The notes under the pieces are model-generated. The model was given only the letters and a program-made list of their open reading frames with translations. It had not been told where the DNA came from and searched no databases. A stretch of 64,000 nucleotides of DNA from Azolla caroliniana (taxonomy: Eukaryota; Plantae; Polypodiophyta): the NCBI GenBank assembly GCA_043228905.1, contig JBHGNT010000006.1, positions 868,001 through 932,000 of the forward strand, in the 5' to 3' direction. Within the stretch, counting starts at the first letter, position 1; the number at the start of each line of letters is the position of its first letter. This document shows, in pieces, positions 30,260 through 52,500 of this stretch. Made by a program: the position numbers and the translations under genes.

Positions 30260-32988
30260 TGTGTGAGTACGTAAGATGCATAGAGAGAAAAGGGAGAGAT
30301 AGAGAGAGAGACTAGAACAAGAAACTATATTAGTGAAAAATATGATAACATCCAACAGTAACTAAGTTACAAAAGGTTGGTTTAAATACCAACTAGTCTA
30401 GGGCAACTACCCTTTCTATTATTTACAAAACTAGCCTAGTGTGTCCACTACTACTGTGAACGCACTTCATTGGGGAAGTTGGGTTCGACTCTCAGCACGG
30501 CCCTTCGAACACAACTTCTGATTGTCGGAGAGGTTGTTTTGTTGTTTGGCTTCGTTTCGGCTTTGTTGCTTCGTGCTCCTTGTTCGACTCGATTGTCATC
30601 ATCATACTTCGACTCCTCAGGTTGGCTTTGATCGACTAATTGGCTACTGTTCGGCTTCGGCTGCTACTATACTCCCCCTCAAGCTCGACAATGCGGTTAT
30701 TGTGAGACCAAGGTCCGATGTAAATTGCCTGAGCTTGTCAACCCCTAAGGCCTTAGTGAAGATGTCAGCAACCTGAAGGTTCGTGTTGATGTGTTGTAGA
30801 TTGACTTCTCCAGCCTGGACATGTTCTCGGATGAAGTGATAGTGCACTTCGATATGCTTTGTGCGCGCGTGGAACACCGGGTTCCGAGCCAGATAAATAT
30901 TGCTCATGTTGTCGTGGTATAGGCGACTCAGATCCTTGATGGGAGCGCTCAAATCCTTCAATATATGCTTCAGCCAAACAGCTTCGCATGCGACAACGAC
31001 CACGCCTCTGTATTTGGCCTCTGTGCTCGATAATGCGACTATCAACTGCTTTTTACTACTCCATGAGATGGCTCTGCGGCCGAGTGAGAAGCCGAATCCC
31101 GACGTTGATCGTCTATCAGCCTTATAGCTGGCCCATCATCTGTGTACCCTTCAAGCCGAATGATCGTATCCCACTTATACATGATGTTGTAATCCATCGT
31201 CCCACGAACATATTTGAGTACTCTCTTATTCGACATGAATTGGCTAAGTAGACCGACCGAATAGCTGAGGTCGGGTCGTGTGATGGTAAGATTGATTAAG
31301 CTGCCTATCAGTTGACGGTACTGAGTCGGCTCGCACTTTGTAGTGCCAGAGTCAGCATCGAGCTTGAGATTTTGATTGAGAGGGGTAGATAGCTAGGTCG
31401 ATCCCGCGTTCTTAACTCACGAAACCACTCTTGGTGTGACATCATATGATGTGAGGCGCCGGAGTTGACAAACCACACATTTTCCGAGTTGGAGGTGCTT
31501 GTGGAGTTGGAGGCCGTCATAGAGTTCGCTCTATGTCTCATTATCAAACCATAGTCGTCGTATTCAGAGTTGGTGGCATAGTTTGTGAGTTGTCGGCATG
31601 TGGAAGCCGACTCTCTTCTTCTCTTTCGGCACTCCTCTTCGCGATGGTTGACCTTCTCACAATAGTTGCAAGTAATGGGCCACGTTTGCCGACTTGTTTG
31701 GCATGGAAGCTCCCCCTTCTTCTGAAGGTTCCTCGATGACTTCCGTCTTCTTGTTGAATGTTTGAATTCCCTTTGTGAGATGGACCGAATTGACCTCTTC
31801 TACTGCCTCAACCTCATCCTCGGCCACCATCCGAATTCGAGAAGAACATTTGTCCTTTAGACATCTTGGTCTTGGTTTGGACGTGGTTCTCTTTGACCAA
31901 TAACATTGATTGGAGGTTGAAGAACGAAGGATGGGTTTCCCTTGCCAAAATTGTCGTCCTTATCGGGTCGAATCGTTGTGCGAGGCCGCCCAAGCATACT
32001 TGAACCATCTCATCTTCGTTGACGTTTATGTTGATGGAGCTAAGTCAGTCGCAAATGCTCTTGATCTTGGCAGTGTAGTCTGACACAAACATATCTTTTT
32101 GTTGAATGTTGTTCAACGCTTGTCGGAATTGAAGCTTGCGGGCGGTCGTGTTGGCGGCGAAGATTTTCTTCAAGTTCTCCCATGCTTCTTTAGGTGTCTT
32201 GGCATCTTGAATGTGGCTAAGCATGTGATCGTGGACACATGTTGCCAAGCAATACATTACCCGACTTGATCCTTGCTCCCATGTTGGGTAGGTTGCATTT
32301 GTGATGTTGGGTTTGTTTTGGAGTGCACCGTTGATGTAGCTCCAATACCCTTGGCCGACTAGGTATTGGTTCATCTTATATTCCCATGATGAAAAATTGC
32401 TTCGGTCTAGCTTTTCACTAGGGAGCGAGCTACCCATTTCTATGTTCATGTTGATGTAGTGTCTTGCTTTTTGGTTTTTCTTCCTTCGGTCATGTAAACG
32501 TGCTACGTAGCGGCACTACGGTAGCGGATAGCTTGGTTTGTTGTCAGCCACGGGCATCTCGAACACACAATCACGAAGAGTTGGTTGGGCTAAGTGGTAA
32601 TTAACTAAGGGTTAATTAGTAACTAATTATGTGAGTAGTTAAGCAACGGAAGATTATACGATATGTGTGTGTATGTGTGTGAGATGAGAGATAGGAGAAG
32701 TTACTAACAAGAGTGTAGCTAAAGACCTTTCTCTATATTAATGATCATCAAAATACAATGATACCCACAATGTGGTATATATACATCTCATGTGCAAGGG
32801 TGCACATGTGTGAGGAGAATATAGGTACAATGAACTTGATAGTGGAGGATCTAGAATGTATCCCACTCAAGTACAAAATCCTATTTAAGGCTTTAAGGAC
32901 AACACTTTCAACTAGATTCTTATTATGTAACTACAAAGTTACATGGTTGACTAAATAGCTAAACCTAGTTGAGCTTGATATCTCGACA
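30260..32988 (-). mobile_element. Truncated, internally deleted Copia element; LTR ~32590-32988 is the same family as the 35840-53179 element
   Basis: gag EKLDRSNFSSWEYKM (32045-32449) and protease WFVNSGASHHM joined directly to the RT end/RNase H (ALSSTEAKY, RTKHIEVHYHFIRE, ADIFTK). The LTR reads TGTCGAGATATCAAGCTCAAC on the minus strand and the PBS is deleted. Confidence 0.85.
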
Positions 32989-35900
32989 ACGGCAATAAAC
33001 AAGATTTGAAGACTCCGACAAGGAGATTGTCCCGTGTCGGCATATGCAACCAATTTTCATCTCTTGGCATGCGATGTCCCTTGGGATGAGGTGACGTTAA
33101 TGGATCAATTCCGTCAAGGTTTGTGTAATTATGTCAAAGATCTTCTTCTTACTTTTCTTGAAGATGCAAGTCTCTTACAGAGGCAATTAGTCGAGTTGTG
33201 CAATGTGATAATCGCCTATTTGAGCGATGTTCTGAGCGCCAACAAATGTTACACCGTCAACCGAAACAGACGTATGCTTCAGTAGTCGCAACGCCTCCAC
33301 AAGTTTCTAGTCCTATTACGAGGGACGACCCAACTCCGATGGAAATAAAGTCAACACAGCGTCAAGGGCCATTATCAGATGTTGAGAAGCAACAACGTTG
33401 AGCACACCGCCTATGCCTATATTGTGGTGTTCCATGACATATAGCCGTGAATTGTCCAGATAAAACCTAGACGTCAAGTATACCAACTAAGTGCACATGA
33501 CAACCTTGCTTCGAGTTCTATTATTTCTTCTAATAACATAATTAAGCCTAATAGCACATGCCATGAGAATAGATTCGATGTCTTGAGCCAATTAGAGGAT
33601 GTGTTAAACGAGTAAGTCCAGGCAAAATAGGAGCCATTTGGTTGGACCATCCTAGATATGTAGAGTCGGTTCCTAGTCGTGGTTCCATTTCATCAAATCA
33701 AGTTAGTGGAGTTTTTTCTACACAAGTTGAGCTTAGCACATCTACATGTCATCGAGTCCTAGCTTCCGCCCTCCTAAATTCCGGAGCCAACTCTTGTTTC
33801 ATGGATCGTGAGCATTGACACAAAACATCCCCTTGAATAAGCTCCCGAACCCAGTAGCCGTAGGAGTCATTGATGGACACCCTATAGCATCAAGTGATAT
33901 AGTCGAAGAGTCTGAGCCATTCGTGTAGTTCATGGCGATTTGGCAAGCATAATCTCTTTCAATGTTATTCGTAGTCCATAACACCCACTAGTTCTAGGTC
34001 TCCCTCGGTTTGAGCTCCATAACCCGAAGATTGATTGGATGAAAAGAACATTTGAGGAGTTCCAAGAAAAAAGAATGAAACTTGCATCCCTCAAATCTCC
34101 GACATTTGATACTGGATCCCATACGTTATCGACCATCTCTCTACGCCGGAAGGGGGGAACGAGGACATGTTCGTATTCGCAATAGTAGCAACTCCATAAC
34201 CTATCTTACATGAGTCGGATATCAAACTACTAGTGAAATACAAAAAGTTCTCAAACTAATACATCGCCAAAGCATTGGCCATACGACTACCTATTGACTT
34301 ACAACCAGGGAAAGAACTTCCATAGCGGTCAATTTATAATCCCTCACCTGTAGAGCGAGAGACTATGCAGGAATATATTGACAAGAATCTGGCAAACGGA
34401 TTCATCCGACATTCTAGATCCCCTGCTGGTGCACCTATCTTCTTTGTTAAGAAAAAAAATGGGTCTCTTCGGTTGGTCGTGGATTATTGAGGGTTACATA
34501 AAGTGACTATCTGGAATAGATATGTGAGTCTATCATTAATCTCGAACCTTTTGGAACGTCTCAGTGGAGCAAAATATTTCATGAAGTTAGACCTTCGCGG
34601 TGCATATAATCTAGTTCGGATTCATCTGGGGGATGAATAGAAGGTTGCTTTTCGCACTCGCTATAGACATTTCGAGTATACCATGATGTCATTCGGTCTC
34701 ACGAATGTACTTGTAGTTTTCTAGCATATGGGGAATGATATTTTTTGAGATTTTCTCGATATCTTCACCATAGTTTACCTGAATGCCATTTTGATCTACT
34801 CGAAGACCAAGAGGATCATGATAAACATGTTTGTCAGGTTCTACATCGACTACGAGAATATGGTCTCTACGCAAAATTAGAAAAGTGTAGTTTTGGCCAG
34901 AATCAAGTGGAATTTTTGGGGTATGTTGTATCATCATATGGTATTTCTATGGACCCCATGAAGGTTCAAACAATTTTAGATTGGCAGACACCCATTTCAA
35001 TGTGTGACGTGCAATGTTTTCTTGAGTTTGCAAATTTTTATCAGAAGTTTATTAAAAATTATTCCAAAGTTGTGCTTCCGCTCACTCAACTCACACACAA
35101 GAATCAACCATTCATATGGAGTTCAAATGCAATCGAGGCATTTGAAAGTTTAAAACAAGCATTTATGACGACACCTATTTTGGCACATGTCGACCCAACA
35201 AAACACCTAAGCCTTCATCCTTGAAGCTGTTGTGTCCAACTTTGCACTAGCGAGTGTTCTATCACAGATTGGAGATGACAAACAACTACACCCGATCGCC
35301 TTTCATTCCTGAAAATTTGAAGTTCCAGAGATCAACTATGAGATCCATGACAAAGAACTTCTTGCAATTGTGGATTCTTTTCAACAATGGCGACATTTTC
35401 TAGAAGCTTCTTCTCAACAAATCATTGTCTACAACAATAATAAGAACCTAATATATTTCCAAAATGCTCGAGTCTTGAATCGAAGACAAGCCCGTTGGGC
35501 ACAATTTTTGACTCACTTCGACTTTGTAATCATATATCGTCCTAGGTGCAAATGCAGCAAGGCAAAGTAGATGCTCTTTCTCGATGCTCTTATATGGAAC
35601 TTCGTTCTAGGGAACCCACATTTGAGCATAAAAACAAATCCTTTTGGGTCCTGATCGCCTAAGATTAATGGCAGCTAATGCCATAACAACACATCAAGAT
35701 TCCATTCAAGATCATATGGCCATTGATGAATTCGCCAACGATGTTTTGGATCATATCGTCTCGGATCATACTTCTTGCTCATAGTCGAAAAACCCTTGTC
35801 ATGACTATAATCAGTTCTATTGGCATGATGGTTTTCTGTTGTTGAGAGATCAAGCTCAACTTAGTTTAGTTAGTTAGTCAACCATGTAACTTCGAACACG

Positions 35901-38189
35901 TTCGCGTTCACAGGTGGAAGGATTGCGCATTCCACTTGTAGAATCTTCTTAAAACGAAGCAAATACACCCTCTCTACAAAAATTGGATGCACTAGTATCA
36001 CATGTTCCTCAACTTGATGAGAATTTGCAAATATAAAAATACATGATAGATCTACGAGTGGAGATCATTAGAAATCATGCAAGTTTAGACACGTTGATAA
36101 GTTAATGTAGGCATAATAAAGTTCAACTATGGCTCAATATGTCACTACTGTGCGACAAGGGAAACACTCACTTAAAGACTTATATTAATTAGGTAAGTTT
36201 CACAAAAATATTAGGTGTACTTGTATCCATACTAATAAAATGAGTTATAATTTATACTTTGACCCATACGTGCATGTATGTAATTGTGGAAAATGTAGGA
36301 TAGTGCACATTAGGATAAGTGATTGGAATAACTAACTTATTAAAGTATTCAATACTTGTATTTAAAGTTGATCTAATCTATTCCTCAGTTTGTTCATATG
36401 GGATCAAACCATATGTATATAATTGTGGACAATGTAAGGCAGTGAACTTTAGGATAATGTCGTGGAAATAACAAACCTATTAGGCTTTCATACCTGTATT
36501 TAAAATTGATCTACTCTATTGCTTAGGTGATTCACACAGGATCAAACTCCGAACGATAACGCAACTGGAACCATTATCAACACACTACACAATCTAAGTA
36601 GCAATGGAATAGAAACATAATAGTTTTAACAATAGAAGACAAAGATCCATAATAACAACATGGACAGTCATGGCAACAATTATAGGGCCATGTTCTGTTA
36701 AGGTTAGCTTGGACCAAAATCAGCCTCAATTTAAACTAATTCATGTTTCTCCATAAATTTGGTAGTCAGCTATGCACGCGGTGAAACCAATGTCATAAAT
36801 CTACTAACCAAGTATATAAAAATAAAATTGAAACATATAGAAGATTATAAAGAATAGAATCCACTAGGTAAAACCCAAAATTTGTATTAATAATGTGAAA
36901 TCCTAACAAATCGTCAGTGTCATTTTCTTCATAGAGTCTATTACATAGCAATCAATTCATCAACGTCATTTTCTTCATCATCTTGTGTAGAACTGTCTTC
37001 GGCTATACGTGCATTGGTTTCCCCTGTTAGCCGAGCCAACGAAATATCTTCTATAAGCTCATCATCAAGCTCTATTAGCTCCCCCGGTTCGCCAGCTAAC
37101 GGAGGAATAGGCTCTCGCGAAGCAGGTTGAAACCTTTTTGTATTAGCGAGGTTCTTTGCACCGACCTCCTCATCCTGGTCTGGGCACTCCCACAAAGCCT
37201 TAATCTGCATGTTAATAAATATAACTTGGTCCTCGTCCTTCTCCAATGCAACTGTATTTCGAAAAAGCTTCAATGCACATGCAGACGTTGTTCCTGTGAT
37301 GTAAGTAACAAGAAGATTTAGTTGTCAAACGAGAAAAAAAGGGATTGGTTATCTCAAGATCGTTACCCTAGTTCGAGGAATACTTGTGCCAGAAAAGAGA
37401 TCTAATATCCAGTCTCCTTCGACAGAAAACATCTCGATCAAGCACATCATAAGTCGTTGAGGTTTTTGGTATGTCGTGGTGACATGTCGCAATTTCCGTG
37501 TCACTGCTGGATATACCAATAGATTTGAACCTCCCACTTCATTAGAATGCTCCTTGATTCTCTGTTTCTTAATTTCATCGAATTAGCCAACCGTTATGTA
37601 TTCAATGGCATTAACGAACTGAAAAGTTGGCCCTCTATTTACATTGGTCTTGATCCTATAAAAAATAATACATCGAGTTAAGAATAGATTGAACAACCTT
37701 AAGAAATGCAATATAGTGAAAGACACCTATAAATTATCCTTACCATGCAAGGTTCTCGATGCCATGGCAACGAATCTCAAAGCTTGAGCTACCGAGTACC
37801 CTTGGTCCATACTATGAAAGACAACTAACACCGGGACATTTGAAACAGGTAATATGTCGCATTTTGAGAACTGTCCATCAAAAAATGACACAAATTAGGG
37901 TGATTCACAAAAAGGGGCGCCACATGCGTAAAGGAATTTTAAAAATGACCCAAAAATATATTGATTTTTAACATGTACGGAAATTTAGGTGTTCAAAAAA
38001 ATGCCTAAATAATGGACATGCCAAACTTACAAATGAATGTCCAAAATGACTAACCCCAATATTTATAGAAATTCTGAATCCAAATCTTGATGTGCAATAC
38101 AATATTTATAGTTAACGTATCAGGACAATCATTTTTCAAGTTTATGTCATCATCTTCATACCCATTAGATGAACTAGTACGAGTTTATG

Positions 38190-38480
38190 AGGTCTCATCC
38201 TCATCATCAATGGCAACTAATGCATTGTGTTGATCCAATTGCAATCCAACCTCATCGAGTTTATGAGTCATGCTTCTTGTTTGTCTTTGTGTTGTGTCTG
38301 AAGCCACATTCCAGATCCTCTTTTAGTATCTTCATTGTTGTCTGTCACAGATAACTTGTTTTGGTCAAAGATAAGTCATACACTAATATATAAACATTAT
38401 CCAATGTAAGAGTAGATGTGCTTGATGCATCTTTCCTCCTCACTTTTTGGTTATGATATTTCATTATGTACTTTCCATTT
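38190..38480 (-). pseudogene. Remnant of the transposase C-terminus in the nested element
   Basis: STSTLTLDNVYILVYDLSLTKTSYL*QTTMKILKE...LDQHNALVAIDDEDE aligns to the host transposase tail NTLTLDISDVDIIMYNFTLTKAGQLRKSTIDIIKE...YDEDNALIGTSEDDEE. Confidence 0.75.
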
Positions 38481-38729
38481 ACAAGATTAGATTATGTGAG
38501 AGAAGCTTTCTACCAAAATCATTAGAATCTAAAAAATGTCTTAAAGATGTTTTCCATTTTTCTTAGATTCTCATAGTAAGCCTTTGATGTCGTACAGAAA
38601 GCCGATTCATTCCATCTAGATTTGACGCAACATGTCGAATTTTACTCTATACATCTAGAATTGGATATAATGCATCAGATTCCTGTAAGTCTTGGAATTT
38701 TTTTAAAAATTTCCATTAAAAAAATACTC

Positions 38730-40510
38730 TTGCATTTTAATGCATTGCATTGAATTCTAGCTACATAGACTAAAATATGATACATTGCATGGATTTCCCG
38801 AAAATACATAAATAAATACAAATTGAAAAAATAAAACATTTTCCCATAAATAAATAAATAAAAATTGAAAAATTAGATTTCAATGGAAATCCAATTCCGT
38901 GCATTGGATTCAATTGAAAATCCAATTTCTCTTATTTTTTTGAAAATTTTCTTATTTTTTGAATTGTTTTTGAATTTGTTTTTATTTTTCCCATAAAAAA
39001 ATAAATAAAAATTGAAAAAATGGATTTTCAACGGAAATCCAATGCACTGCATCAGATTTTGGTTGAAAGTCCACTTTTACGTATTTTTTTCCAAATTTGC
39101 TTTTAAATTTTTTTTTTTTTTAAATTTTTTATATAAAAAATAACTAAATATTGAAAAAATAGATTTTCAATGGAAATCCGATGCACTGCATCAGATTTCC
39201 GTAGAAAATCCACTTTTTCTTATTTTTTTCCAAATTTTCATAGTTTTTAGAATTTTTTTGGTATTTTGTTTGTCTATTTTCTCATAAATAACTATATAGA
39301 AATTGAAAAAATGAATTTTCAAAGGGCATCGGATTTCTATTGAAATTCCACTTTTTGCTATTTGTTACCAAATTTTCATATTTTAAAATATTTTTTTGTA
39401 TTTTTAAATTTTTTTTTCATTTTTTCCCATAAATAAATAAATAAAAATTGCAAAAAATGGGTTTTCAACAGAAATCCGATGCACTACATCGGATTTCTAT
39501 TGAAAATCCATTTTGTCTTATTTGTTTCCAAATTTTCAGATATTTTGAATTTGTTTTGAATTGTTTTTGTTTTTATCATAAATAAATATATAGGAATTGA
39601 AAAAAATGGATTTTCAACGGAAATCCGATGCACTGCATCGGATTTCCATTGAAAGTCCACTTTTTCTTGTTTGTTTACAAATTTTCTTATTTGTTTATAT
39701 TTTTCTCTAAAAAAGTGTTAAAAATAAACAAATTGTGATTTTCTCCATTTAAAATGATGTGTTTTCAACGGGAATCCGATGCAGTGCATCGGATTCCCGT
39801 TGAAAATAGATCATTTTCAACAGGATTTTCAATGGAAATCCGATGCACTGCATCGGATTTCCGTTCAAAATCACTGAGTTTCAACAGAAATCCGATGCAT
39901 TCCGTTGAAAGTCCAATATTTTTCTTATGTTTTTTCATAAAACATTAATTTGCAATTGAAATTCGACTCAATGGTTCAAATTTTGTTGAAAATGTAATAT
40001 TTTTTTATTATCTCATTGTTTTATGAAAAACCTAAAAGAAATTTGGATTTTTAATTGAAATTCGATGTATTGCATTAGATTTCAGTTGGAAATCCACTTT
40101 TTTAATATATTTTTATTTATTTTTTGAAAAAATGAAAAACAATTGAAAAGAAAGAGGATTGCCAGCTAAAATCTGATGCAATGCATCAATGTCTATCTAT
40201 ATAGACTACGATCTGATGTAGTGTATCGGATTTCAGTTGAAAAGCCGTTTATTATTATTTTATATGGAAAATAAATAAATAAATAACATTGGAAAAAGAA
40301 AAAAGAAAAAAGGATTTTCGACTCTAATCCAACACATTGCATTAGATTCTAGCTATATATACTAAAATATAATGTAGTGCATAGTATTTTAGCTGAAAAT
40401 CCATTTTTTATTTTTTAATGGAAAAAATTTTAAAAATTACACAAAAAAAAAAAACTTGGATTTTCAACTGAAATCTAGTGCATCGCATTGGATTCCAATT
40501 AAAAATCCAA
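38730..40510. repeat. Array of ~15 palindromes TTTTCAAYGGAAATCCGATGCACTGCATCGGATTTCCRTTGAAAA with AT-rich spacers
   Basis: Clear copies near 38878, 39025, 39164, 39462, 39611, 39762, 39826, 40050 and 40462, plus degenerate ones. Core period ~140-150 bp. Confidence 0.88.
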
Positions 40511-40702
40511 GATTTTTTATTTTTTCAAATTTTATTGTTTCAAATTTTCAATGGGTTTTAGATTAGTTTTTTGACACAGGTATATAATATAAAACTTACA
40601 TCAATTTAGATTAACGTTATATTCTATTCTTCAGTTTGATGTTACCTGTGCAATTTCATTCTACTGTCATGTACTACTAAAACATACGCCTTAAAGATTA
40701 TC

Positions 40703-41000
40703 AGGAACTCTGTTGCATTAGAGAAGGACCTTGAGCAAGTTAATGTCATCAAAATGAGGATCCAAGGTATCTGGAGTTGTCCTGATCAAGACCAAGAAGT
40801 TGGGGCAAAGCATATCAATAAAACTTAGATGTTCCAGATGACTTTTAGAAAACTTGTGGAACTATAGATGAAGACGCAGGGCAACTTGTTGAATTAGAAG
40901 ACGTTTCAGAGTCTGAACATACTAACAATTCAACTTAGCGTACTGACGAAGCCAATGAGGACAATCCTGATGAAAGAGCTAATCCTGAGTAGACGGCTTT
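40703..41000 (+). pseudogene. Remnant of the last methyltransferase exon in the nested element
   Basis: RNSVALEKDLEQVNVIKMRIQGIWSCPDQDQEVGAKHI versus host RNTVALEKDEDQVIFINMQIKALWECPDQDEEVGAKNL. Confidence 0.85.
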
Positions 41001-44000
41001 ACCAGACTTATTATTCGATTGAATGGTTATGGCTTATTGTAAATTTTGAACAATATGAATTGTTAAATTTTGACATAATATATAAGTTGAGCTTACTTAT
41101 AATTTTCGTGCAACAATCATTGAACTTAGAAATTAAGTATACTTGTATGTGTACATGTTATCTAAACTCTCCTTTATCATTTGGGGTATATCGGAGATAA
41201 GTTTATACTCTATCATTTACTCGTATGATTGGAATGTTATTGTAGACTAGTTTATTTATACATTGACAGTGTCATGTATCACGTGTCAATGGAAATTTTC
41301 TCTTGACATAGTAGTATCTCTTAATTGCAAGGTTCACAATTTGCTTTAAGATGTATTATATTTAAATATACACACATAATTAGAAGAAGTCACTTATTCA
41401 ATGGGGCATGCTTTTTAGAATATGCACAAGGATCCGTGTTACTATTATACTTGTGTTGACAAATACACCCCTGTCTAAGATTTGGACAAAAACATGGTAG
41501 ATAGAATATACGTTGAATGATTTTGTTGACGTGATATTAGTTAGTTCTTTTTTTCGCTATGTTTTCATAAACCACATACACATGCGTCGTGCCTTGTTGA
41601 AATTCTGCTTAAATAAGGCATTTTTTAACATCTCACTAAGATATGAAAAAGAGAATGCGACATATTACCTGTTTCAAATGACCTGGTGTTAACTATTCGC
41701 CACAAGGATGCAGTCGTTAGCTCAGCGAAATCCTTGACCATCTTCTCCAATTGTTTAAACCTAAACGGTTCATCGTCGTATGATGACCCAACCATTCGAA
41801 ATCCGTAAGGAATATCCGCAATCATTAGCATATATTCCTTCTTTGGCACCTTTTGGATCAAGTCGACGACATCACCGCAAACCACATTGTAGTAAAGATC
41901 TCTCGTAATATCTTTTTTGTGGCTAAATTTTTTAAAGGAGCCATCTTCCTCCATTTCGTACGCCTTGACTAAGCGACGATCCTTTTCTTTTCTGGCTCGC
42001 TCGAGATGTGCAAGGAAGGATGTAGGGAAATCGTGTATATCCTTAACTTCTCCTTGTTTCTTGCCTCGACACGGATTCTAATAGAAGCAATAGGACATCA
42101 GGTATTATTATACAAGCTCTACATATGATGAAAGGGTAATGAAAAATCATCAATACTAACCCAATCCTTGAAATTATGCAATAAAATACTCCGATAACGC
42201 CTTATATGAAGACGTTAGAGGATAATCCTCGGTCACTTGTTCCCAAGTTATACATCCAAGTTGTTTCATCATAACTTCTTGGATCTTCATGTACACCTTA
42301 TGACTGTAAAATTAGAAATCAAGATTAGAACTTTGAATTACACCAAATAGACTACAATTTCAGTATTTGAAAGACTTACTTATTGAACTCAGTGACCATT
42401 TCTTCAAGGCTTAAATCTTTCGCCACAACCCTTGACAAAACAGACACAAGAAGCTGCTCGTCCTTAATACCTTGCATCGCTTTCCACAGAGACAGCTTCA
42501 TGTCGTCTGCCGCTTCTTCAATTGTCAAGTCAATTTTCTTGGCGGCTTGTGACTTTAACTCTAGTTGAGGGTCAACCTTACATTTCTTTTGTTGTTGACC
42601 CTTTACCTCCTTATTCTCCCACATTGAGAAGATTTGATCTTGTAGGTCCCAAACTTCTCCATCTCTAAACGCCAATTGAAACCAAGACTCATACTTTCGA
42701 AGACCATCAGACTTAACATTATCATCTACCACAATGCCGACTTCATGCAGACATTGACGTCGTAGGCCTGGATGTAACTTCACACCAAACTTTTGTTTCA
42801 CGTCTAAATACTCGTGGTGGAAGAACCGTATACGCTCAATGGACGACATTTTCTGCCTATAGTCATTATCATTATTATGGTCCCATGCCAACAACTTAGC
42901 CTCTTCGGTTGTGAGCCCAACATAAAATTTGCACTCGGCATACTTGAAGAAGAAAGTCGTTGGATGTTCTCTCACAAGTTGCCGACGTGCCTCTACTGAA
43001 TGCGATCCACCAATGACAAAATAATTATATTGATCATGCTTTCTAATATCAAAATCTTCAATGGGTTCACATTCTTCAGGATCTACCATAACAATAAAAG
43101 GCACCACAGTGGCATGAGGATTAATTTTCATTTTTTTCTTGAGATTTTGAACATGCATGCGGTGTGGCTCTCTAATCTCAAGTGGTCGTCGACCTGTTTT
43201 TTCATCAATAGGGGGCCGATGGATGTGTGTTATAGGCAAATTAAACACTTGCCCTTTCCTGACCAGTTTCCGTTGCATTAACTCTCTCCTTATCTTATTC
43301 TGCTCGGATGACAAAACACCCGATGCCAGCTCAGCTCATGGCGTCCCCTTATTATCCTCTTCGTTTTCACTTGTTGAATCGGTGTCCGACATTTTGGTTG
43401 TCTTCTTCTTTGGTGGTCTTGACTGGACTTTGGATACCCTTTTTGTGGCCTTCAATGGGGAGGGCACTTCATCTCTTAGAGTTACATGGCCTTGTATATA
43501 AGGCCTCAAGGTAACAATAAGGTTTTGTGAGCTTTCAAGATCTTTTTTGAACGCTTCTGGCCCACAAGATTCCTTTACTAAAAGGTCTTCTGAAAGGAAC
43601 GCTTTACGTACCCCCTTGGAGCACTCTATCATTACCAGTATGTTGGCCGAATCCGCATCTTCGTAGTCAAATCGTAGAATACGGCCATACATAAATGGGG
43701 TTTCCTTTCCAAGCTGCCCCTCCCCCTTCTTCTTTGATGTATACAATACGACTTTTTTCTTTGAGTCGACATATTGCATACACCATTCCTTGTCCGTTAG
43801 ATCACAGTCAGGAAGGTCTTCACCTCCAGTAGCGGCGACAAGTTTCTTTTGGCTAACATCAATATGTGGCTGAGATTTTGTCTCTTTGTTGAAGAGAAGC
43901 TTTTTCCCTCTCTTCATGGTCTCAAGAGCTACCTTGGTCTGGGCTTCGATTGGAGAACCCTGTATGCGAAGCTTTATTTTCTTCACGGGTCGGTCCGACA

Positions 44001-44517
44001 AGTTCTCAAACGACCTATTTAAGAAAGTATATGCAAAAACATAAGTTAGGTGGTCACGTAGATTAAGGTTGTATATTAAAATATAAATATTAAGATGAAG
44101 AATAGTTCTCACTAGCAGGCGATTAGTGGTGAAGTGAAAATATCAATCATGCATTCAGAGTACATGGTAGTCCTATATTCAAAAATCTATTCTAGGCAGG
44201 GCTATTCAAACTAGAAAATATATATCGTAATAAGTAAACAGGGTTATATATTCTTTTAAAGAGTAGGTATGACTTATATAGATTCCAAACCTATATTGAG
44301 GAGAATTTGCTATCGTAAAGGCAATTTGTGGATCGTTTTCTTCTATTTTAAGCTAAAGTAGGTCATAAAACACCTATAATTATGGCATGTTTTTTTTTAA
44401 AAGTAAGGCAAGTCAACATAAAAAAGACTGATTTTGACAGACAATTTGATATCTTTTCCACACAATAATTAATTGTTACCCCAAAAACACAATTTTTCTC
44501 TTTCAGAGCCTTCTTTT

Positions 44518-44836
44518 ATACAGGAACTCGATACGGCGTATCGAGTTCCTGTTTAAAGTTTAGGACTTTAAACAGGAACTCGATACGCCGTATCAAGTTC
44601 TTGTGCTTTCTTTGCTTTTTAAACAGGAACTCGATACGGCGTAAACTTTAAACACGAACTCGATACGCCGTATCGAGTTTGTGTTTAAAATCCAAACTTT
44701 AAACGGGAACTCGATACGCCGTATCGAGTTCCTGTTTAAAAAGCAAAAACAAATTATGAACTCGATACGCCGTATCGAGTTCCTGTATAAAGTTTGTATT
44801 GTATACAGGAACTCGATACGGCGTATCGAGTTCTTG
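44518..44836. repeat. Array of 7 palindromes CAGGAACTCGATACG(G/C)CGTATCGAGTTCCTG in intron 1 of the ParB-MTase gene
   Basis: Copies at ~44521, 44573, 44624 (truncated), 44653, 44704, 44758 and 44806; ~50-bp period. Confidence 0.93.
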
Positions 44837-45034
44837 AGCGACGAAACATATTTACAAAACTGTCCACAGTGTCAGAGGCCTACCTGGAGTCCTCGCGCTC
44901 GATTCTCTTTGAAGACATGGTTGATCATGTGGGCAGTGGAGGCGGAGATCGCGCTTTGGTGCTTTGTGCTCTGTGTGCTCTGTGTGCTTTGTGTGCTCTG
45001 TACGCTCTTGTGAGTGAAATATGACGAGGTCTTC

Positions 45035-45044
45035 CTATTTATAG
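45035..45044 (-). promoter_or_regulatory. Putative TATA box (CTATAAATAG) of the ParB-MTase gene
   Basis: Plant-consensus TATA ~120 bp upstream of the ATG at 44918. That short exon (MSSKRIEREDS-AG|GT) splices in phase to 44014. Confidence 0.55.
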
Positions 45045-45744
45045 GGATTGACCACATTGGTTAAAGTAACCATAGTCACCTTAACCAAGGTTGGTAAGTT
45101 TGAGGATAGTTAGTTGGTAACCACAGTCACATTAACTAGAGTAACTTATGATTGCATTAATGATTACAAAGTCAAACTAACATATTGATCAATCTTTTAT
45201 AGTCATAACAACCTGCAATGACTTCAAAGGTCATGAAGGAGACAATGATAGAGGTTCATGAATGAACCAATGATTGATTACTAAAAGCAACAATTTTTAT
45301 GACTCTCAAATGCTGTGTATTAAAGATGTGGGCATGAATTAACCAATGATTGATAAGTCTAATATTTAAAATGGTGAGCATTAAAGAACCAATGAGTGAG
45401 AGGTTCTATATCAAAATGGGTGCCATTAATTAGCCAATGATTTTAACATTAATCGAACATATTCATGGCTTGTTAATGATTAGATTTATATTATACTTGA
45501 TTTAACTTCATATAGATGTAGTTTATATAATAATTGATATTTTAAGTACAATTACTTTATTAAAAATAATTTTTTTATGTATTGTATTAATAGAATATTA
45601 CATAATATAGACATTCTATTGATTTGGCTTTTGTTTAGAGAGAAGTTTATGTTTAGAGAGGAGTATATGTTTAGAGAGGAGCTTATTAGTTTTTTTCCTT
45701 ACCCTAAGCACATAACTTACAGAGCCCTATCTAGACCTTAAGCC

Positions 45745-45965
45745 ATCAGTGAAGATTCACCGTTCTCGATTGAAGAATATTGTTTGTCATTAGACTCATC
45801 GTTTCCTACTGAAGAGTATTGTTTGTCAACAGAGTCACCATATTCGATTGAAGAATATTGTCTGTCGACAGACTCACCATATTCTATCGAAGAATATTGT
45901 CTGAGCTCATCTACAGGGAATGTAAATAATGACACATGTGAAGAGTTCTCTATTGAAGAATACGA
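45745..45965 (+). repeat. 39-bp coding tandem repeat (SPYSIEEYCLSTD/E) at the transposase N-terminus
   Basis: 4-5 copies of TCACC(A/G)T(A/T)TTC.AT.GAAGAATATTGT.TGTC. Confidence 0.8.
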
Positions 45966-48525
45966 TATTAATAAAGATACGGAGAATGAAGGTAGTGCCC
46001 AGGAAACATTGAATAACATTGGCGATGGTCACAACAGAGAATTAGATTGTAACAAGGTTACACCAACCTCTATGCAGGAAGAGAAATCTGGGAGACCTAT
46101 GCATATTAGAAGAATCCCACGAAGAATTCGTCTGGCTAGATTTAGCTTGGTGACATCAGATAAACAGATTGGATTTGATGTCAAAAAAATATGTTGTGCC
46201 CGTGGTTGTATGTCTATGATTGGAAAATCAAAGTTGCGAGAATTAAGGCGATACTATTTTTCGATGACTGGTGATGAGCAAGACACTTACCTCGGGTCAC
46301 ATATGCAACTAGTATCTGACAAATGTACGGGGATCAAAGTATCATTCGAGTATTATATCTTCCATGCGCAACAGATATGTAGAGTTGCATTCAAAATTGC
46401 GTTATGTGTTAGTAACATGCGGCTACATAGAGTACAACAACGTCTACTTAGCGGGGATCAGATGCTCAATTGTAAAGAGGTTCCAAGTATGAAAGGTGCA
46501 ATTGGAAGACATGCTATTGGTTGGATGAAAACTTACTTTCAGTCAAATTGTGAAGTAATGCCCACTACAGGTAGGATGCATCTTTCTGATAATTATACAC
46601 GTCGGGAAGTTTATGATGTCTATCGATCTGATATGCTAGGCTCACGTAATAAGTCTATCACCTATAGCCAATTCACAAGATTATGGAGAGCTCGGTTTTC
46701 AAATGTTATTATTCCTCGTAAAGTACGTATGGGGTATTGCTCCATTTGTGCAAATCTTAAAAGTTTGGCTAAAGGTACAAAGACATCAATGGAAAAGGAT
46801 ACGAGTAAGAAGTTACTACAAGAGCATCGTGAGGCACAATCCTTAGAACGAAAGAAGGCGATGCATCATAGAGAGAAGTGTTTGAAGAGGCCCGAACAAT
46901 ACATGTGCTTAATGATAGATGGCATGGACCAGAAGAAGACATGCTTGCAGCATATGCGGAGGCTCCCCAAAGATGTCAATGATGAGTGCCTTGTTCAAAT
47001 GCACTTGGTGGGATGCTTGGCTTATAATAGGTCTGTTCGACCTCACGTCTTCATTACTTACCCCAATGTTCACAATGACCCTAACCTAACAGTTACAGTG
47101 ATTCACCGAGTTTTGATGTCTTGGGGCCAACCTTTCCCCCCTGTTCTATACATTCAATTGGACAATACTGCTAGAGAGAACAAAAATTCAACTGTATTTG
47201 GCTATCTAAGTATGTTGGTCAACCTAGAATTGTTTAGGAAAGTGAAAGTCAATTTCCTTTTGGTTGGCCACACACATGACCATATAGATTAGATGTTTAG
47301 CACATTCTCCAGATAGTTGTCTCGGCATGATGCTTTCACTTTACCTAAAATATTTGATGTCATTTGTGATGCATATACACCACGCCCAAAAGTGTTACAC
47401 TTGAAGGAGGTATATGACTTTAAGAGATATATATCAGATGGGGGTGGTGGGAATGTTAAAGTGCTTGCTCAGTTAAACAATATAAGTTTCAATCACATTT
47501 TTATGATAAAGAAAAATGGAATAAGTGGTTCTACACTTTTGTATGCTAAACAATATTCATCTTCTACAACATGGGAACCTGAAGGTGGTTGCCAGTTATT
47601 ACTTTGTATGCCGAGTACAATTGTCCATGGAGTTAAGCAAATGCCAATTGAGAAGAAAGGACAGTTGCAGAGCGACTTGGTATCGGAACAAAAACGGTCA
47701 TGGCTCCAAGCCTTAGAAGAAAAAAGAAAGCATATTGAGGCCGCCAAGAAATATGCCGCACAACAAGACACGTCATGGTGGGATGTATTTTATATTGATC
47801 AGAAAGAAATTATAGACAATTGTGTATCTGTTGATAATTGGAATTTGGAAACGCCATTCACATGGTCGCTGCAACATGATCGCGTAAATAGAACTCCGGA
47901 GCAACTAGTAAATGCGATTAATGACAGCTTAGTCCATCCACAACAAAGAGACATTTATGTGGGACCAAGGATGACCAAAGCAGCCGAACCTAGATGGCAA
48001 GGCAATTTGCAAGAGGTCACCGCGGGGATGTTGATTGCAACGCTGGCTGATGAGAACTCACATGGCCACCAATTTTGGGTTGGTAAAATTCTAGAAGTGC
48101 TAATGCATGAAATAGAAAACACGATCAAGTCTATAAATGTTCATTGGTACAACACTAGAAGTGCAAATGCTTTTACAGGTAAGTATACATTGGGGATGAT
48201 TGAATGCCCAACAAGAAGGGGAGGTAGGAAGAGGAAGCGAAACATTCGTAACACCTTGACCCTTGATATCTCTGATGTGGATATCATCATGTACAACTTC
48301 ACACTTACAAAAGCCGGACAATTAAGGAAGTCAACAATAGATATAATAAAAGAAAAATTACCAGGTCTACAAGGTGGCTCGAGTCAAAGGCAAACGAGAT
48401 CTGCTACATATAATCTAGAGTCAAACCATTTGGTTTATGACGAAGATAATGCACTAATTGGTACATCCGAGGATGATGAGGAGGAATTGTCATTGTATAT
48501 TAGTTATAGTAGTGATTCTCCGTAA
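45784..48525 (+). pseudogene. Sola1-like DDD transposase (~900 aa) with two in-frame TAG stops (47290, 47314)
   Basis: CCxxxC and ICRVAF N-terminal motifs, SQFTRLW, CSIC...H, catalytic IDGMDQ, LYIQLDNTARENKN and FLLVGHTHDHID*MFS. ORFs 45784-47292 and 47317-48525 share one frame. Start codon uncertain. Confidence 0.85.
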
Positions 48526-48983
48526 AGGAGTGATCATGAATGTATATTTGGCTATTAAGTGTAACTACATTCCGCTTGTAACAAATCGAGTAATATAAAA
48601 GCATGTGTTTTGAATTCTTATGATTTCTAAAAAATCGTTTCTTATAAAATAACATTGGTTGTAAAGTTTGTGATATAAATTGAGAATGTATCTTTTTGAA
48701 ATTCGTCTTTTTTTAGTTACTTCTAAATCACGAAAATAGTGGATTTTTAACCTTTTTCATAGTATGTTTGAACATGTATGATACTGGTATCAATGTGTTT
48801 TGTAAAATCATTGAAAAAGCCCTAAAATTTCCCTTATCCTTCCATTTATGCGCGATCCTTCCACTTGTGAACGCGAACGTGTTTTCGTAGTTACCTAGAT
48901 AGAATCTAGTTAAAAGTGTTGACTATAACGCCTTAAATATGACCTTGTACTTAAGTGGGATATTCTAGATCCTCCACTCCCAA

Positions 48984-49510: not shown

Positions 49511-52500
49511 CCCAAGTACATTTAATATAGGACTATATTCTCCTCACACATGAGATCTATATATACCTAATTGATGATGCTAATTTAATATATAGTTAAT
49601 CATCCCCCATCTTGTGTTGTTCATAAGTGTACTTCTCTCTCCCTTCCTCTCACACACATATCACTTAATCTTTCACTTAACTTAATCACATAATTAGGTA
49701 CTAATTAACCCATAGTTAATTACCTCATTCTTAACATGGTATCAGAGTGTGTGGTTTAGAAAATCCACTAAGCCCACCCGACTCCGTGATTGTGTGTTCA
49801 AGATGCCGACGACAAAATCCGGCTATCGGCTACCGTAGTGCCGCTACGTAGCACGTGGACGCGATCGAAGGAAGAAAAGCAAAAGAAGAGAAGACACTAA
49901 TCAACATGAACACACAAATGGGTAGCTCGCTCCCTAGTGAAAAGCTAGACTGGAGCAATTATTCATCTTGGGAGTACAAGATGAACCAATACCTCGTCGG
50001 CCAAGGGTATTGGAGCTACATCAACGACACTCAAGAAAATAGACCAGACCCAAAGAACGCAGACTACTCAACATGGGAGCAAGCGGCGAGTCGAGTCATG
50101 TATTGCTTGGCAACATGTGTCCACAACCACATGCTTAGCCACATTCAAGACGCCAAGACGCTTAAAGAAAATGTTCGCCACCAACACGACCTCTCGAAAG
50201 CTTCAACTCCGACAAGAGTAGAACAACATTCATCAAGAAGATAGTGTCAGACTTCACCGCCAAGATAAAGAGCATTTGCCACTCGCTTGGCTCCATCGAC
50301 ATAAACGTCGACGAAGACGAGATGGTTCAAGTATGCTTGGGTGGCCTCGCACAACGATTCGATTACTTGAGGACGGTAATCCTAGCAAGGGAAAACCATC
50401 CTTCGTTCTTCGACCTTCAATCAATGCTAATGGTTGAATAGAACCACATTCGAACCAAGACCAAGATGTTGGAAGGACAAATGTTCTTCTTGAATTCAGA
50501 TGGTGGCCGAGAACAAGGTCGAGGCGGTAGAAGAGGTCGATTCGACCCATTACACGAAGGGAACTCAAACCTTCGACAACAAGACGGAAGCCACCAAGGA
50601 ACCATCGGAAGAAGGGGAAGCTTCCATGACGAACCAGGTTGGCAAACGTGGCCCATTGCTTGAAACTATTGCAGCAAAATCGGCCACCGCAAAGAGGAGT
50701 GTCGGAAAAAGAGAAGCGAGTCGGCTTCGACACGTTGATAACTCATAAACTAGGCCAACAACTCCAAATACGAAGACTACGATGGTCTATTCATAATGAG
50801 ACATAGAGAAAAATCTATGACGGCTTCCAACTCCGCAAGCACCTCCAACTCGAAAGACGTGTGGTTCATCGATTCCGGTGCCTCACATCACATGACATCC
50901 CACGAATAGTGGTTCAGTGATTTGCGCACACCCGATCAACCCGGCGTCATAGAGACCGGTAACGACACCACACATCCCATTCGGCACATCGGCAATGTCC
51001 CATTCGGGAAAGAAGGCGAGCAAACTTGCCTCAAGAATGTCTTGCATGTGCCCACAATAACGAAGAATTTGGTCTCGGTCGGCCAAATCGTGGAGCAAGG
51101 CATGCAAGTCCACTTCAACAATGAAGGATGCTTCATTGAGAAAGATGACTGAATCATAACTGAGGGGTGGAGAGATGGTCGAATGTTCATCCTCGATTCG
51201 AACGAAGTGAAATTGGAAATGTACGTTAAAGGTATCAAAACCGAGACAAGCATCAAGTTGTGGCACAAAAGAATCAGCCACATAAACCTCCAACGACTTC
51301 AAGCTATGCAATCAAAGGGAGTCTTCATCGGACTTCCGACATTCGAGTCGTAACGAGTTGACCGAGTATGCGAATCGTGTTAACTCGGCAAACACATCGA
51401 CTCCCATTCCCGAAGGAGAACTACGTAAGCAAAGGGCTCCTTGACATCATACACTCGGATGTATGGGGACCGGCTCATTCGCCGACGATCGGCAGATGCC
51501 GATACTACGTCACCTTCATCGACGACTACTCCCACTACACGTGGATCTTCCCAATGAAGAAGAAGAGTGAAGTGCTCTCCCACTTCCAAAAGCTCAAGGG
51601 TCAAGTCGAAAAATAAATCGGTCGGCACATTCGATGCCTACAATCGGACGAAGGAAATGAGTCCTTCTCCGATGAATTCACCTCCTACCTCCAAAGTGAA
51701 GGCATTCGGAGAGAATTATAGTGCCGACACACACCCCAACAAAATGGAGTAGCCGAAAGGAAGAATCGGCAAATACTCGAGGTAGCACATGCCAGGATGC
51801 ATGAGAAGCTCATGTCGAGTTTCTATTGGGCCGAAACGACATCCACGGCTGTCTATCTCATGAATCAATGCACCACCAATGGAGTGCATGAGATAACTCC
51901 ATATGAGCTCCTTGTCAGAAGGAAGTCGATCCTGTCACACCTCAAGGTGTTCGGAAGCATTGCGAATGTACGCATCCCGAACAAAAACTGACGGAAGCCC
52001 AACGTAAAGTCGGAGGAATGTATCGTCATAGGATACTCATTCGAGAAGAAGGCATACAAGTGTTATAACCCTTCGACTCGAGCGGTTTGGGTGAGTCGAG
52101 ACGTAGTCTTCGACGAATCGGCATCATGGTATAGGCCCGAGTTGACTCCACCTGACCCGACCGAGGAAGAGTTGAATGTCAACTCGAAGGATGACATTCG
52201 GCCAAGCCCTTCACCAAAGGACCGTCCAAGCTCTATCGAGCTAAGTGGACCACACGATCCTTCAATCCTTCCAAGTACGTCGCGGCCAAGTACGACCTTG
52301 GACAAAGGCAAAGGTAAGATGCCCGAATACGAAGTCGACCACCCCGACAATAGTGATTCGGATGTGTTAGATCCTTCACTAGACAGTGAGTTTGGTATAC
52401 CCACCTTGTGGACACCTAGAGTAAAGAAGGCACTCACATCGGCGAGCGAAAAACTTCGACGCTCATCTCGAGAGAAGAACCCTGTCACTTGGCTCAGCTA

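What the first reader, a model, noticed from the sequence alone, without database searches (positions are those of the whole stretch)
37827..41690. A second, diverged family member carries the same transposase + MTase + palindrome layout
Seen: the nested element has different TIRs that share only the AACAC terminus and a 4-bp TSD with the host element. It still retains the transposase tail near one end (38190-38480, minus), the last MTase exon near the other (40703-41000, plus; about 60% amino-acid identity by eye) and a palindrome array between them. Inference: the MTase is an ancient, retained component of this transposon lineage rather than a Pack-type passenger. This is internal replication of the main claim within the window. 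The nested element also disrupted its relative's MTase just downstream of the catalytic motif.
Basis: partly seen in the sequence, partly recalled or inferred. Interest (0 to 1): 0.85.

Follow-up and report, generated by a model that had tools for sequence, protein, structure and literature searches.

The report
Nested dead relative of ParB-methyltransferase transposon
A 3.9-kb gene-less copy from a second, anciently diverged family of a plant cut-and-paste transposon has jumped into the DNA-methyltransferase gene of a relative. Complete members of that second family, fetched from public data, carry the same methyltransferase gene under strong selection, so the gene is an old core part of this transposon lineage and not a picked-up passenger.

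Summary
Window 37827-41690 is a 3,864-bp non-autonomous element with 37-bp inverted ends (35/37) and an AACT duplication. It sits inside a coding exon of the ParB-like/amino-methyltransferase gene of a 13-kb host element (35895-48883, TTCG duplication).

It keeps only a broken transposase tail, a broken last methyltransferase exon and 11 palindromes.

Both tails group with a separate family ("B"), not with the host family ("A").

Public contigs hold complete family-B elements. L042 has near-identical ends (36/37), the same palindrome, an intact 897-codon transposase frame, and an open 573-codon ParB exon followed by the downstream methyltransferase exon blocks.

Between families the methyltransferase and the transposase have diverged equally (dN 0.37 each). 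Synonymous sites are saturated, and omega is about 0.05-0.2. Eight-taxon trees of the two genes have the same topology, which includes a liverwort element.

The design (Sola1-type transposase, opposite-strand ParB-methyltransferase) was published for a brown alga in 2025. This scan has already flagged it many times elsewhere in this genome.

New here: several deep families, and a multi-copy non-autonomous subfamily that keeps and expands the palindrome array.

The parts
37823..37826 (.). Target-site duplication AACT, left copy
37827..37863 (+). Left inverted end of the nested element, 37 bp, starts AACACCGGG
   Evidence: 35/37 match to the right end; 36/37 to the L042 left end
38194..38452 (-). 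Remnant of the last ~90 codons of a family-B transposase: two blocks with a frameshift between them and one in-frame stop
   Evidence: tblastx to L001 64% over 47 aa, to host 44% over 34 aa. The DNA tree puts it with L001, support 91/98
38886..40496. Expanded array of 11 palindromes (core AATCCGATGCA-N-TGCATCGGATT), period ~139-150 bp. Places 39378-39423 inside it were not sent to any search tool
   Evidence: The same palindrome occurs once in L042 and L063, and 4 to 12 times in L072, L023 and L028
40655..40991 (+). Remnant of the last exon of a family-B ParB-methyltransferase gene, with at least 2 in-frame stops
   Evidence: tblastx to L001 65% over 74 aa, to host 55% over 60 aa, E 7e-18. The DNA tree puts it with L001/L004, support 95/95
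41654..41690 (-). Right inverted end of the nested element
41691..41694 (.). Target-site duplication AACT, right copy
35895..48883 (.). Host family-A element: 35-bp ends matching 33/35, TTCG duplication at 35891-35894 and 48884-48887, 9.1 kb without the nested insert
36941..44112 (-). Host ParB-like/amino-methyltransferase gene. Exon blocks: 44112-42373 (in-frame stop at 43336-43338), 42329-42177, 42080-41695 plus 37826-37775 (split by the nested element; motif IV DIPY), 37666-37472 (one stop), about 37504-37379 (motif I), 37312-36941
   Evidence: tblastx blocks shared with L001-L007. PF01555 at 27.4 bits on 37379-37504. ParB/Noc/Srx fold matches
44522..44835 (.). Host palindrome array, 6 copies, 51-bp period (core ACTCGATACG-S-CGTATCGAGT)
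45784..48525 (+). Host transposase: one frame of about 913 codons with a single in-frame stop at 47290-47292; DUF7869 domain

Best explanation
The nested element is a non-autonomous, internally deleted member of a second family (B) of the same transposon lineage as its host (family A). The lineage has DUF7869 (Sola1-type) transposases, ends starting AACAC and 4-bp duplications.

[quoted passage not shown] One or more palindromes lie between the two gene starts.

Shown:
- Two internal deletions removed nearly all of both genes from the ancestor of the nested copy. What remains is the ends, the two gene tails next to them, and the central palindromes, which then expanded to 11 tandem copies.
- Related copies that share the same left breakpoint exist elsewhere.

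Inferred:
- This derivative was moved in trans by a family-B transposase that recognises its ends.
- One copy landed by chance in the exon between motif IV and motif I of a family-A methyltransferase gene and inactivated it.
- Because both families, a third and fourth fern family and a liverwort element all share gene order, exon blocks and palindrome core, the methyltransferase was already in their common ancestor and has been kept by selection.
- The ParB domain most likely binds the palindromes and brings the methyltransferase to the element's own DNA.
For: - Exact ends and duplications. The empty-site frame is restored and aligns to L003.
- Both tails group with family B and are closest to L001.
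- L042 is a complete family-B element with 36/37 identical ends, an intact 897-codon transposase frame, a 573-codon ParB exon, downstream exons and the identical palindrome core.
- L078 aligns to nested positions 1-1407 at 85% and L094 to 1-1040 at 94%, both running through the left deletion breakpoint near position 630.
- 10 listed runs, including 71-83 million-letter ones, hold 62-73% of the element's 31-mers (8 of organism A, one of organism B, one leaf metagenome), as expected of a multi-copy repeat.
- Equal dN for the two genes: host vs L001 0.369/0.367, vs L006 0.334/0.348, vs L007 0.309/0.341.
- Pairwise omega is 0.01-0.05 between families and about 0.14-0.23 within family B where synonymous sites are unsaturated.
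- The methyltransferase and transposase trees have identical 8-taxon topologies.
- The Riccia element L008 has AACAY ends, a TCTA duplication and both genes.
- Palindromes of all fern families share a CGAT(A/G)C...G(Y)ATCG core.
- The ends are alignable across families.
Against: - No copy from this genome other than the one in the window was read. The full-length family-B elements come from metagenome assemblies of unnamed plants; high-coverage contigs may be collapsed consensus, and their flanks show no matching duplication.
- L001's transposase lacks the N-terminal third.
- Synonymous sites are saturated between families, so those omega values are upper-bound style estimates. The tblastx-anchored alignments favour conserved blocks.
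- Two ML pairwise runs gave discordant values (host-L005 transposase, L042-L072), which I treat as optimiser failures.
- Several inner nodes of both trees have bootstrap support below 50.
- There is no evidence of transcription, splicing, methylation or ParB-palindrome binding.
Confidence: 0.85

Rival explanations
1. The methyltransferase is a passenger: each family captured a cellular or bacterial gene independently, or recently (Pack-type).
For: The gene is of bacterial/phage type. Some DUF7869 transposases have no such gene nearby (L009, L011, L012).
Against: All fern families and the liverwort element share the same position, orientation and exon blocks. Divergence equals that of the transposase. 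Tree topologies are identical. Omega is far below 1.
Confidence: 0.03
2. The nested element is not a separate family but an old, heavily mutated or recombinant copy of the host family.
For: The ends match the host ends at 20/37 positions, and the layout is the same.
Against: Both tails fall in the L001/L004 clade with 91-98% support, apart from the host clade. The ends are 36/37 identical to L042, which is 56% identical to the host at the protein level with saturated synonymous sites. The palindrome type is family-specific.
Confidence: 0.04
3. The palindrome array in the nested element is an unrelated satellite that happens to sit there and is not part of the transposon design.
For: It is AT-rich and tandem, with a period (~149 bp) unlike the host's 51 bp. 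Autonomous L042 has only one palindrome.
Against: The palindrome core is identical to the one between the two genes of L042 and L063, and 4 copies lie just upstream of the ParB exon in L072. Related cores lie at the same place in every family. There are none elsewhere in the 64-kb window.
Confidence: 0.05

Closest known systems
Sola1-1_Ec32 of Ectocarpus (Genome Biol 2025, PMC12477816)
   Same: [quoted passage not shown] The authors propose that the protein binds and marks its own element.
   Different: That element is 21.5 kb and from a brown alga, and no palindrome array is mentioned in the passage read. Here the elements are 6.5-9 kb, from ferns and a liverwort, in several deep families with conserved palindromes. 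Sequence homology to the Ectocarpus protein was not tested.
Plavaka (CACTA-type) elements of the red alga Bostrychia, with accessory gene PAG3 (bioRxiv 10.1101/2025.02.11.637652)
   Same: A ParB-like domain fused to a DNA-modifying enzyme, with tandem arrays of inverted repeats next to the gene; the same self-targeting idea is proposed.
   Different: A different transposase superfamily. The ParB domain is fused to a 2OG oxygenase, and the N6-adenine methylase sits in a separate gene (PAG2) together with a SET domain.
Bacterial and phage ParB/Noc/KorB proteins
   Same: The predicted fold of the 312-aa exon matches Noc, ParB, Spo0J, KorB and sulfiredoxin as the top 25 Foldseek hits. Their binding sites are palindromes, often repeated.
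   Different: No sequence-level match to any solved chain or to the Pfam ParB models. The model is of low confidence (pLDDT 63). No partition ATPase partner is present.
Internally deleted non-autonomous DNA transposons (the Ds / dSpm type of derivative)
   Same: Same ends as the autonomous element, internal deletions, dead gene tails, multiple copies sharing a breakpoint, presumed movement in trans.
   Different: This derivative has kept and multiplied an internal palindrome array that is not part of the ends.

Membership tests
   AACT for the nested element, TTCG for the host, TCTA for Riccia L008
Sola1-type (Sola superfamily) cut-and-paste transposon | Terminal inverted repeats | tested here: met
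   35/37 and 33/35
Sola1-type (Sola superfamily) cut-and-paste transposon | Transposase homologous to curated Sola1 DDD transposases | not testable with these tools
   Only Pfam DUF7869 matched (1.6e-32 for the host, 1.7e-52 for L042). No Sola1 reference profile is on hand. The label comes from earlier scan notes and from analogy with the Ectocarpus element.
Transposons with a ParB-methyltransferase accessory gene | Accessory gene on the strand opposite to the transposase, inside the ends | tested here: met
   Host, L001, L042, L005, L006, L007 and L008
Transposons with a ParB-methyltransferase accessory gene | N6_N4 amino-methyltransferase domain with motif IV and motif I | tested here: met
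   PF01555 at 27.4 bits (cut-off 26.7) on window 37379-37504 and 37.5 bits on L003. DIPY and LDLFSGT motifs.
Transposons with a ParB-methyltransferase accessory gene | ParB-like DNA-binding domain | tested here: inconclusive
   Foldseek top hits are all ParB/Noc/KorB/Srx, best E 8.6e-4 and probability up to 0.98, but TM is only 0.2-0.39 on a pLDDT-63 model. There is no sequence-level hit.
Non-autonomous deletion derivative of family B | Ends the same as an autonomous element, no intact gene, copies sharing a breakpoint | tested here: met
Pack-type gene capture | A captured cellular gene fragment, not conserved across families, evolving neutrally | tested here: not met
   Omega is far below 1, dN equals that of the transposase, and the trees are identical

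The most novel reading that the evidence does not exclude
The palindrome array is a third cis-acting part of the system. Non-autonomous derivatives that have lost both genes keep and multiply it because the ParB-methyltransferase supplied in trans by autonomous relatives marks array-bearing copies. That marking would favour their survival or movement, for example by escaping host silencing or by being recognised as 'self'. Family-specific palindrome variants would then act as family-specific addresses, co-evolving with the ParB domain.
Probability: 0.25. Interest if true: 0.75.

Novelty: new member of a known kind. Interest (0 to 1): 0.5.

Why it matters
It shows that the ParB-methyltransferase gene is a long-kept, selected core gene of a whole clade of land-plant DNA transposons, spanning at least four fern families and a liverwort element, and is not an accident of one copy.

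That makes these elements a good place to test whether a transposon can direct amino-methylation (6mA or 4mC) to its own DNA in plants. The non-autonomous subfamily, with its expanded palindrome array, is a natural experiment on what the palindromes are for.

As a single finding it is corroborating evidence for something this scan and a 2025 paper have already flagged.

Tried and rejected
There is therefore no depth, empty-site or copy-number evidence from reads. Those places were masked in scripts and kept out of every later search.
- A profile search of the ParB exon against solved structures found nothing, and Pfam gave no ParB hit.
- An IQ-TREE codon model for a joint omega timed out. Biopython YN00 failed on all pairs. 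Two ML pairwise values (host-L005 transposase omega 0.94; L042-L072 omega 0.73) contradict the NG86 counts for the same pairs (pS 0.66-0.74, pN 0.11-0.19) and were set aside as optimiser artefacts.
- Ungapped and blastn-short searches found no ends for L006 or L007; L006's flanks are microsatellites.
- The repeat finder with a small max_distance missed the palindromes, so a script was used instead.
- Bao et al. 2009 could not be read. A literature search for DUF7869 found nothing.
- The search of earlier findings by place (near) and by sequence gave nothing.
Exons were searched one by one by reference. Exon blocks were concatenated only inside local alignments for dN/dS and trees.
Full report
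**Setting.** The window is AT-rich, plant-like DNA full of retrotransposon debris: copia-type gag at 32045-32449 and 49855-50244, and an RT/RNase H fragment at 34745-35224. The nearest named relatives of the transposase are in the ferns Ceratopteris and Adiantum, the liverwort Riccia, and Ginkgo. The sequencing runs that hold the element have coded names.

**The host element.** It spans 35895-48883. Its 35-bp inverted ends match 33/35 and start AACACGTTCG, and it is flanked by a TTCG duplication.
- Transposase, plus strand, 45784-48525: one frame of about 913 codons with a single in-frame stop, carrying Pfam DUF7869 at 1.6e-32.
- ParB-like/methyltransferase gene, minus strand, about six to seven exon blocks between 44112 and 36941.
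- The 312-aa exon 42376-43314 has no Pfam or PDB sequence match. An AlphaFold model (pLDDT 63) gives Noc, ParB, Spo0J, KorB and sulfiredoxin as all of the top 25 Foldseek hits, best E 8.6e-4.
- Later exons carry motif IV (LMIADIPYGF) and motif I (LDLFSGTS). The latter exon scores 27.4 bits on PF01555, just above Pfam's cut-off of 26.7.
- Six palindromes with a 51-bp period lie between the two gene starts.

**The nested element.**
- It spans 37827-41690, with 37-bp ends matching 35/37 and an AACT duplication on both sides.
- It lies in the motif IV exon, 37 codons after DIPY. Removing it plus one AACT copy restores a frame that aligns without a gap to L003 at 86% over 146 aa. This is empty-site evidence for a true insertion.
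- It has no intact gene.
- On the minus strand, 38194-38452 encodes the last ~90 codons of a transposase, with one frameshift and one stop.
- On the plus strand, 40655-40991 holds the last methyltransferase exon, with at least 2 stops; it is 55% identical to the host exon over 60 aa, E 7e-18.
- Between these remnants are 11 palindromes with a 139-150-bp period. None occur elsewhere in the window.

**The ends are related across families.** In fact the host and nested ends match at 20 of 37 ungapped positions, including an inner CGCATT block in the same register. The end of a third family (L002) begins like the host end and continues like the nested end. The ends are therefore homologous too.

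**Which family does the nested element belong to?**
- A protein search with the ParB exon found two identity bands, 87-96% and about 72-74%. Local comparison split the hits into three clades: A (host, L003, L005), B (L001, L004) and C (L002, L007). Ceratopteris L006 stands apart from all three in the trees.
- The nested element aligns to L001 at both tails and both ends at 72-78% nucleotide identity.
- DNA trees place its methyltransferase tail with L001/L004 (support 95/95) and its transposase tail with L001 (91/98). Both are apart from the host clade.

**Full-length relatives of the nested family.** A scan of metagenome contigs with 22 bases of the nested end found 90 contigs from a run of adjacent ENA accessions, ERZ1034375-ERZ1034427.
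- L042 (7,870 bp, 111x coverage) is bounded by ends 36/37 and 35/37 identical to the nested ones. It has an intact 897-codon transposase frame (DUF7869, 1.7e-52), a 573-codon ParB exon, the downstream exons, and one palindrome whose core is identical to the nested palindrome.
- L063 is 97-98% identical to L042 (aligned codons). It comes from the same assembly (ERZ1034411) as L094, which matches the nested element at 94% over 1 kb.

**The nested copy belongs to a non-autonomous subfamily.** Homology to full-length L001 stops near nested position 630, which marks the left deletion breakpoint. L078 (85%) and L094 (94%) continue to align through it into the array. These copies therefore descend from one deletion derivative that spread. 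Small sequencing runs hold 62-73% of the element's 31-mers, which fits a multi-copy repeat. Autonomous family-B contigs have 1 to 4 palindromes; L028 and L023 have 12 and 7, and the nested copy has 11.

**Selection.**
- On tblastx-anchored codon alignments, host versus family B gives pN 0.29 against pS 0.86, which is saturated. dN is 0.369 for the methyltransferase and 0.367 for the transposase. The two genes are equally matched for L006, L007 and Riccia L008.
- Pairwise ML omega is 0.01-0.05 between families.
- Within family B, where synonymous sites are not saturated, L042-L013 gives pS 0.31 and pN 0.06 (omega about 0.17), and L042-L063 gives omega 0.14-0.23.
- Because copies also decay neutrally after insertion, these values overestimate omega in the active lineages.

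**Tree congruence.** ML trees of the two proteins for the eight elements that carry both genes (host, L005, L001, L042, L063, L006, L007, L008) have the same topology. The well-supported clades are A (92/99), B (97/99) and L042+L063 (100/100). The inner nodes joining B, L006 and L007 are weak in both trees. This is consistent with co-divergence, but the sample is small.

**Palindromes across families.** Every fern family has palindromes at the same place, with a shared CGAT(A/G)C ... G(Y)ATCG core and family-specific flanks. Riccia has different ones. This fits a binding site that evolves together with its protein, but binding was not tested.

**Limits of the claim.** The transposase copies in L009 (Adiantum) and L011/L012 (marine) have no detectable methyltransferase nearby. 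The association is therefore old within the sampled fern-liverwort clade, not universal for the domain.

**Comparison with what is known.**
- The Ectocarpus study describes Sola1-1_Ec32 with an opposite-strand ParB plus N4C/N6A methyltransferase gene. [quoted passage not shown]
- The Bostrychia preprint describes ParB-fused accessory genes next to tandem inverted repeats in Plavaka elements.
- The design is therefore known. I found no description of it for land plants.
- Earlier agents of this scan reported the same element type on other pieces of this genome.
- The Sola1 label could not be tested against curated profiles.

Noticed in passing
window 31396-32539 and 49815-50941: Two copia-type gag-bearing retrotransposon pieces, 77-87% identical, lie in opposite orientation on either side of the region. 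The host element itself sits just downstream of an RT/RNase H fragment (34745-35224).
   Followed up: partly
L002:4204-4248 and L007:4642-4686: The ends of the third family start like the host end (AACACGTTYGCGT) and, in L002, continue like the nested end (GAAACAGGTAATAT). This looks like an intermediate or mosaic end sequence.
   Followed up: partly
L028:216-1110 and L028:3812-5290: A 50x-coverage contig carries 12 nested-type palindromes and a nested-type end, together with a ParB exon only 56% identical to L001. It may be a further family or a chimeric assembly.
   Followed up: no
L011:1026-5845, L012: Marine (TARA) contigs with a DUF7869 transposase have different neighbouring genes of 798, 182 and 266 aa with no Pfam match, and no methyltransferase.
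   Followed up: partly
L008:4297-15227 (Riccia sorocarpa CM100795.1): A complete liverwort element with AACAY ends, a TCTA duplication, an annotated 689-aa methyltransferase gene divergent from the transposase, and unrelated 42-bp palindromes at 8376-8541.
   Followed up: partly
window 44965-45012: A short 9-bp tandem repeat (TGTGCTCTG, 5.4 copies) between the host palindrome array and the transposase start.
   Followed up: no
L042 vs L001: In the same pair of elements, synonymous differences are higher in the methyltransferase gene (pS 0.84) than in the transposase (pS 0.60). The cause could be alignment of non-coding blocks or a real rate difference.
   Followed up: no
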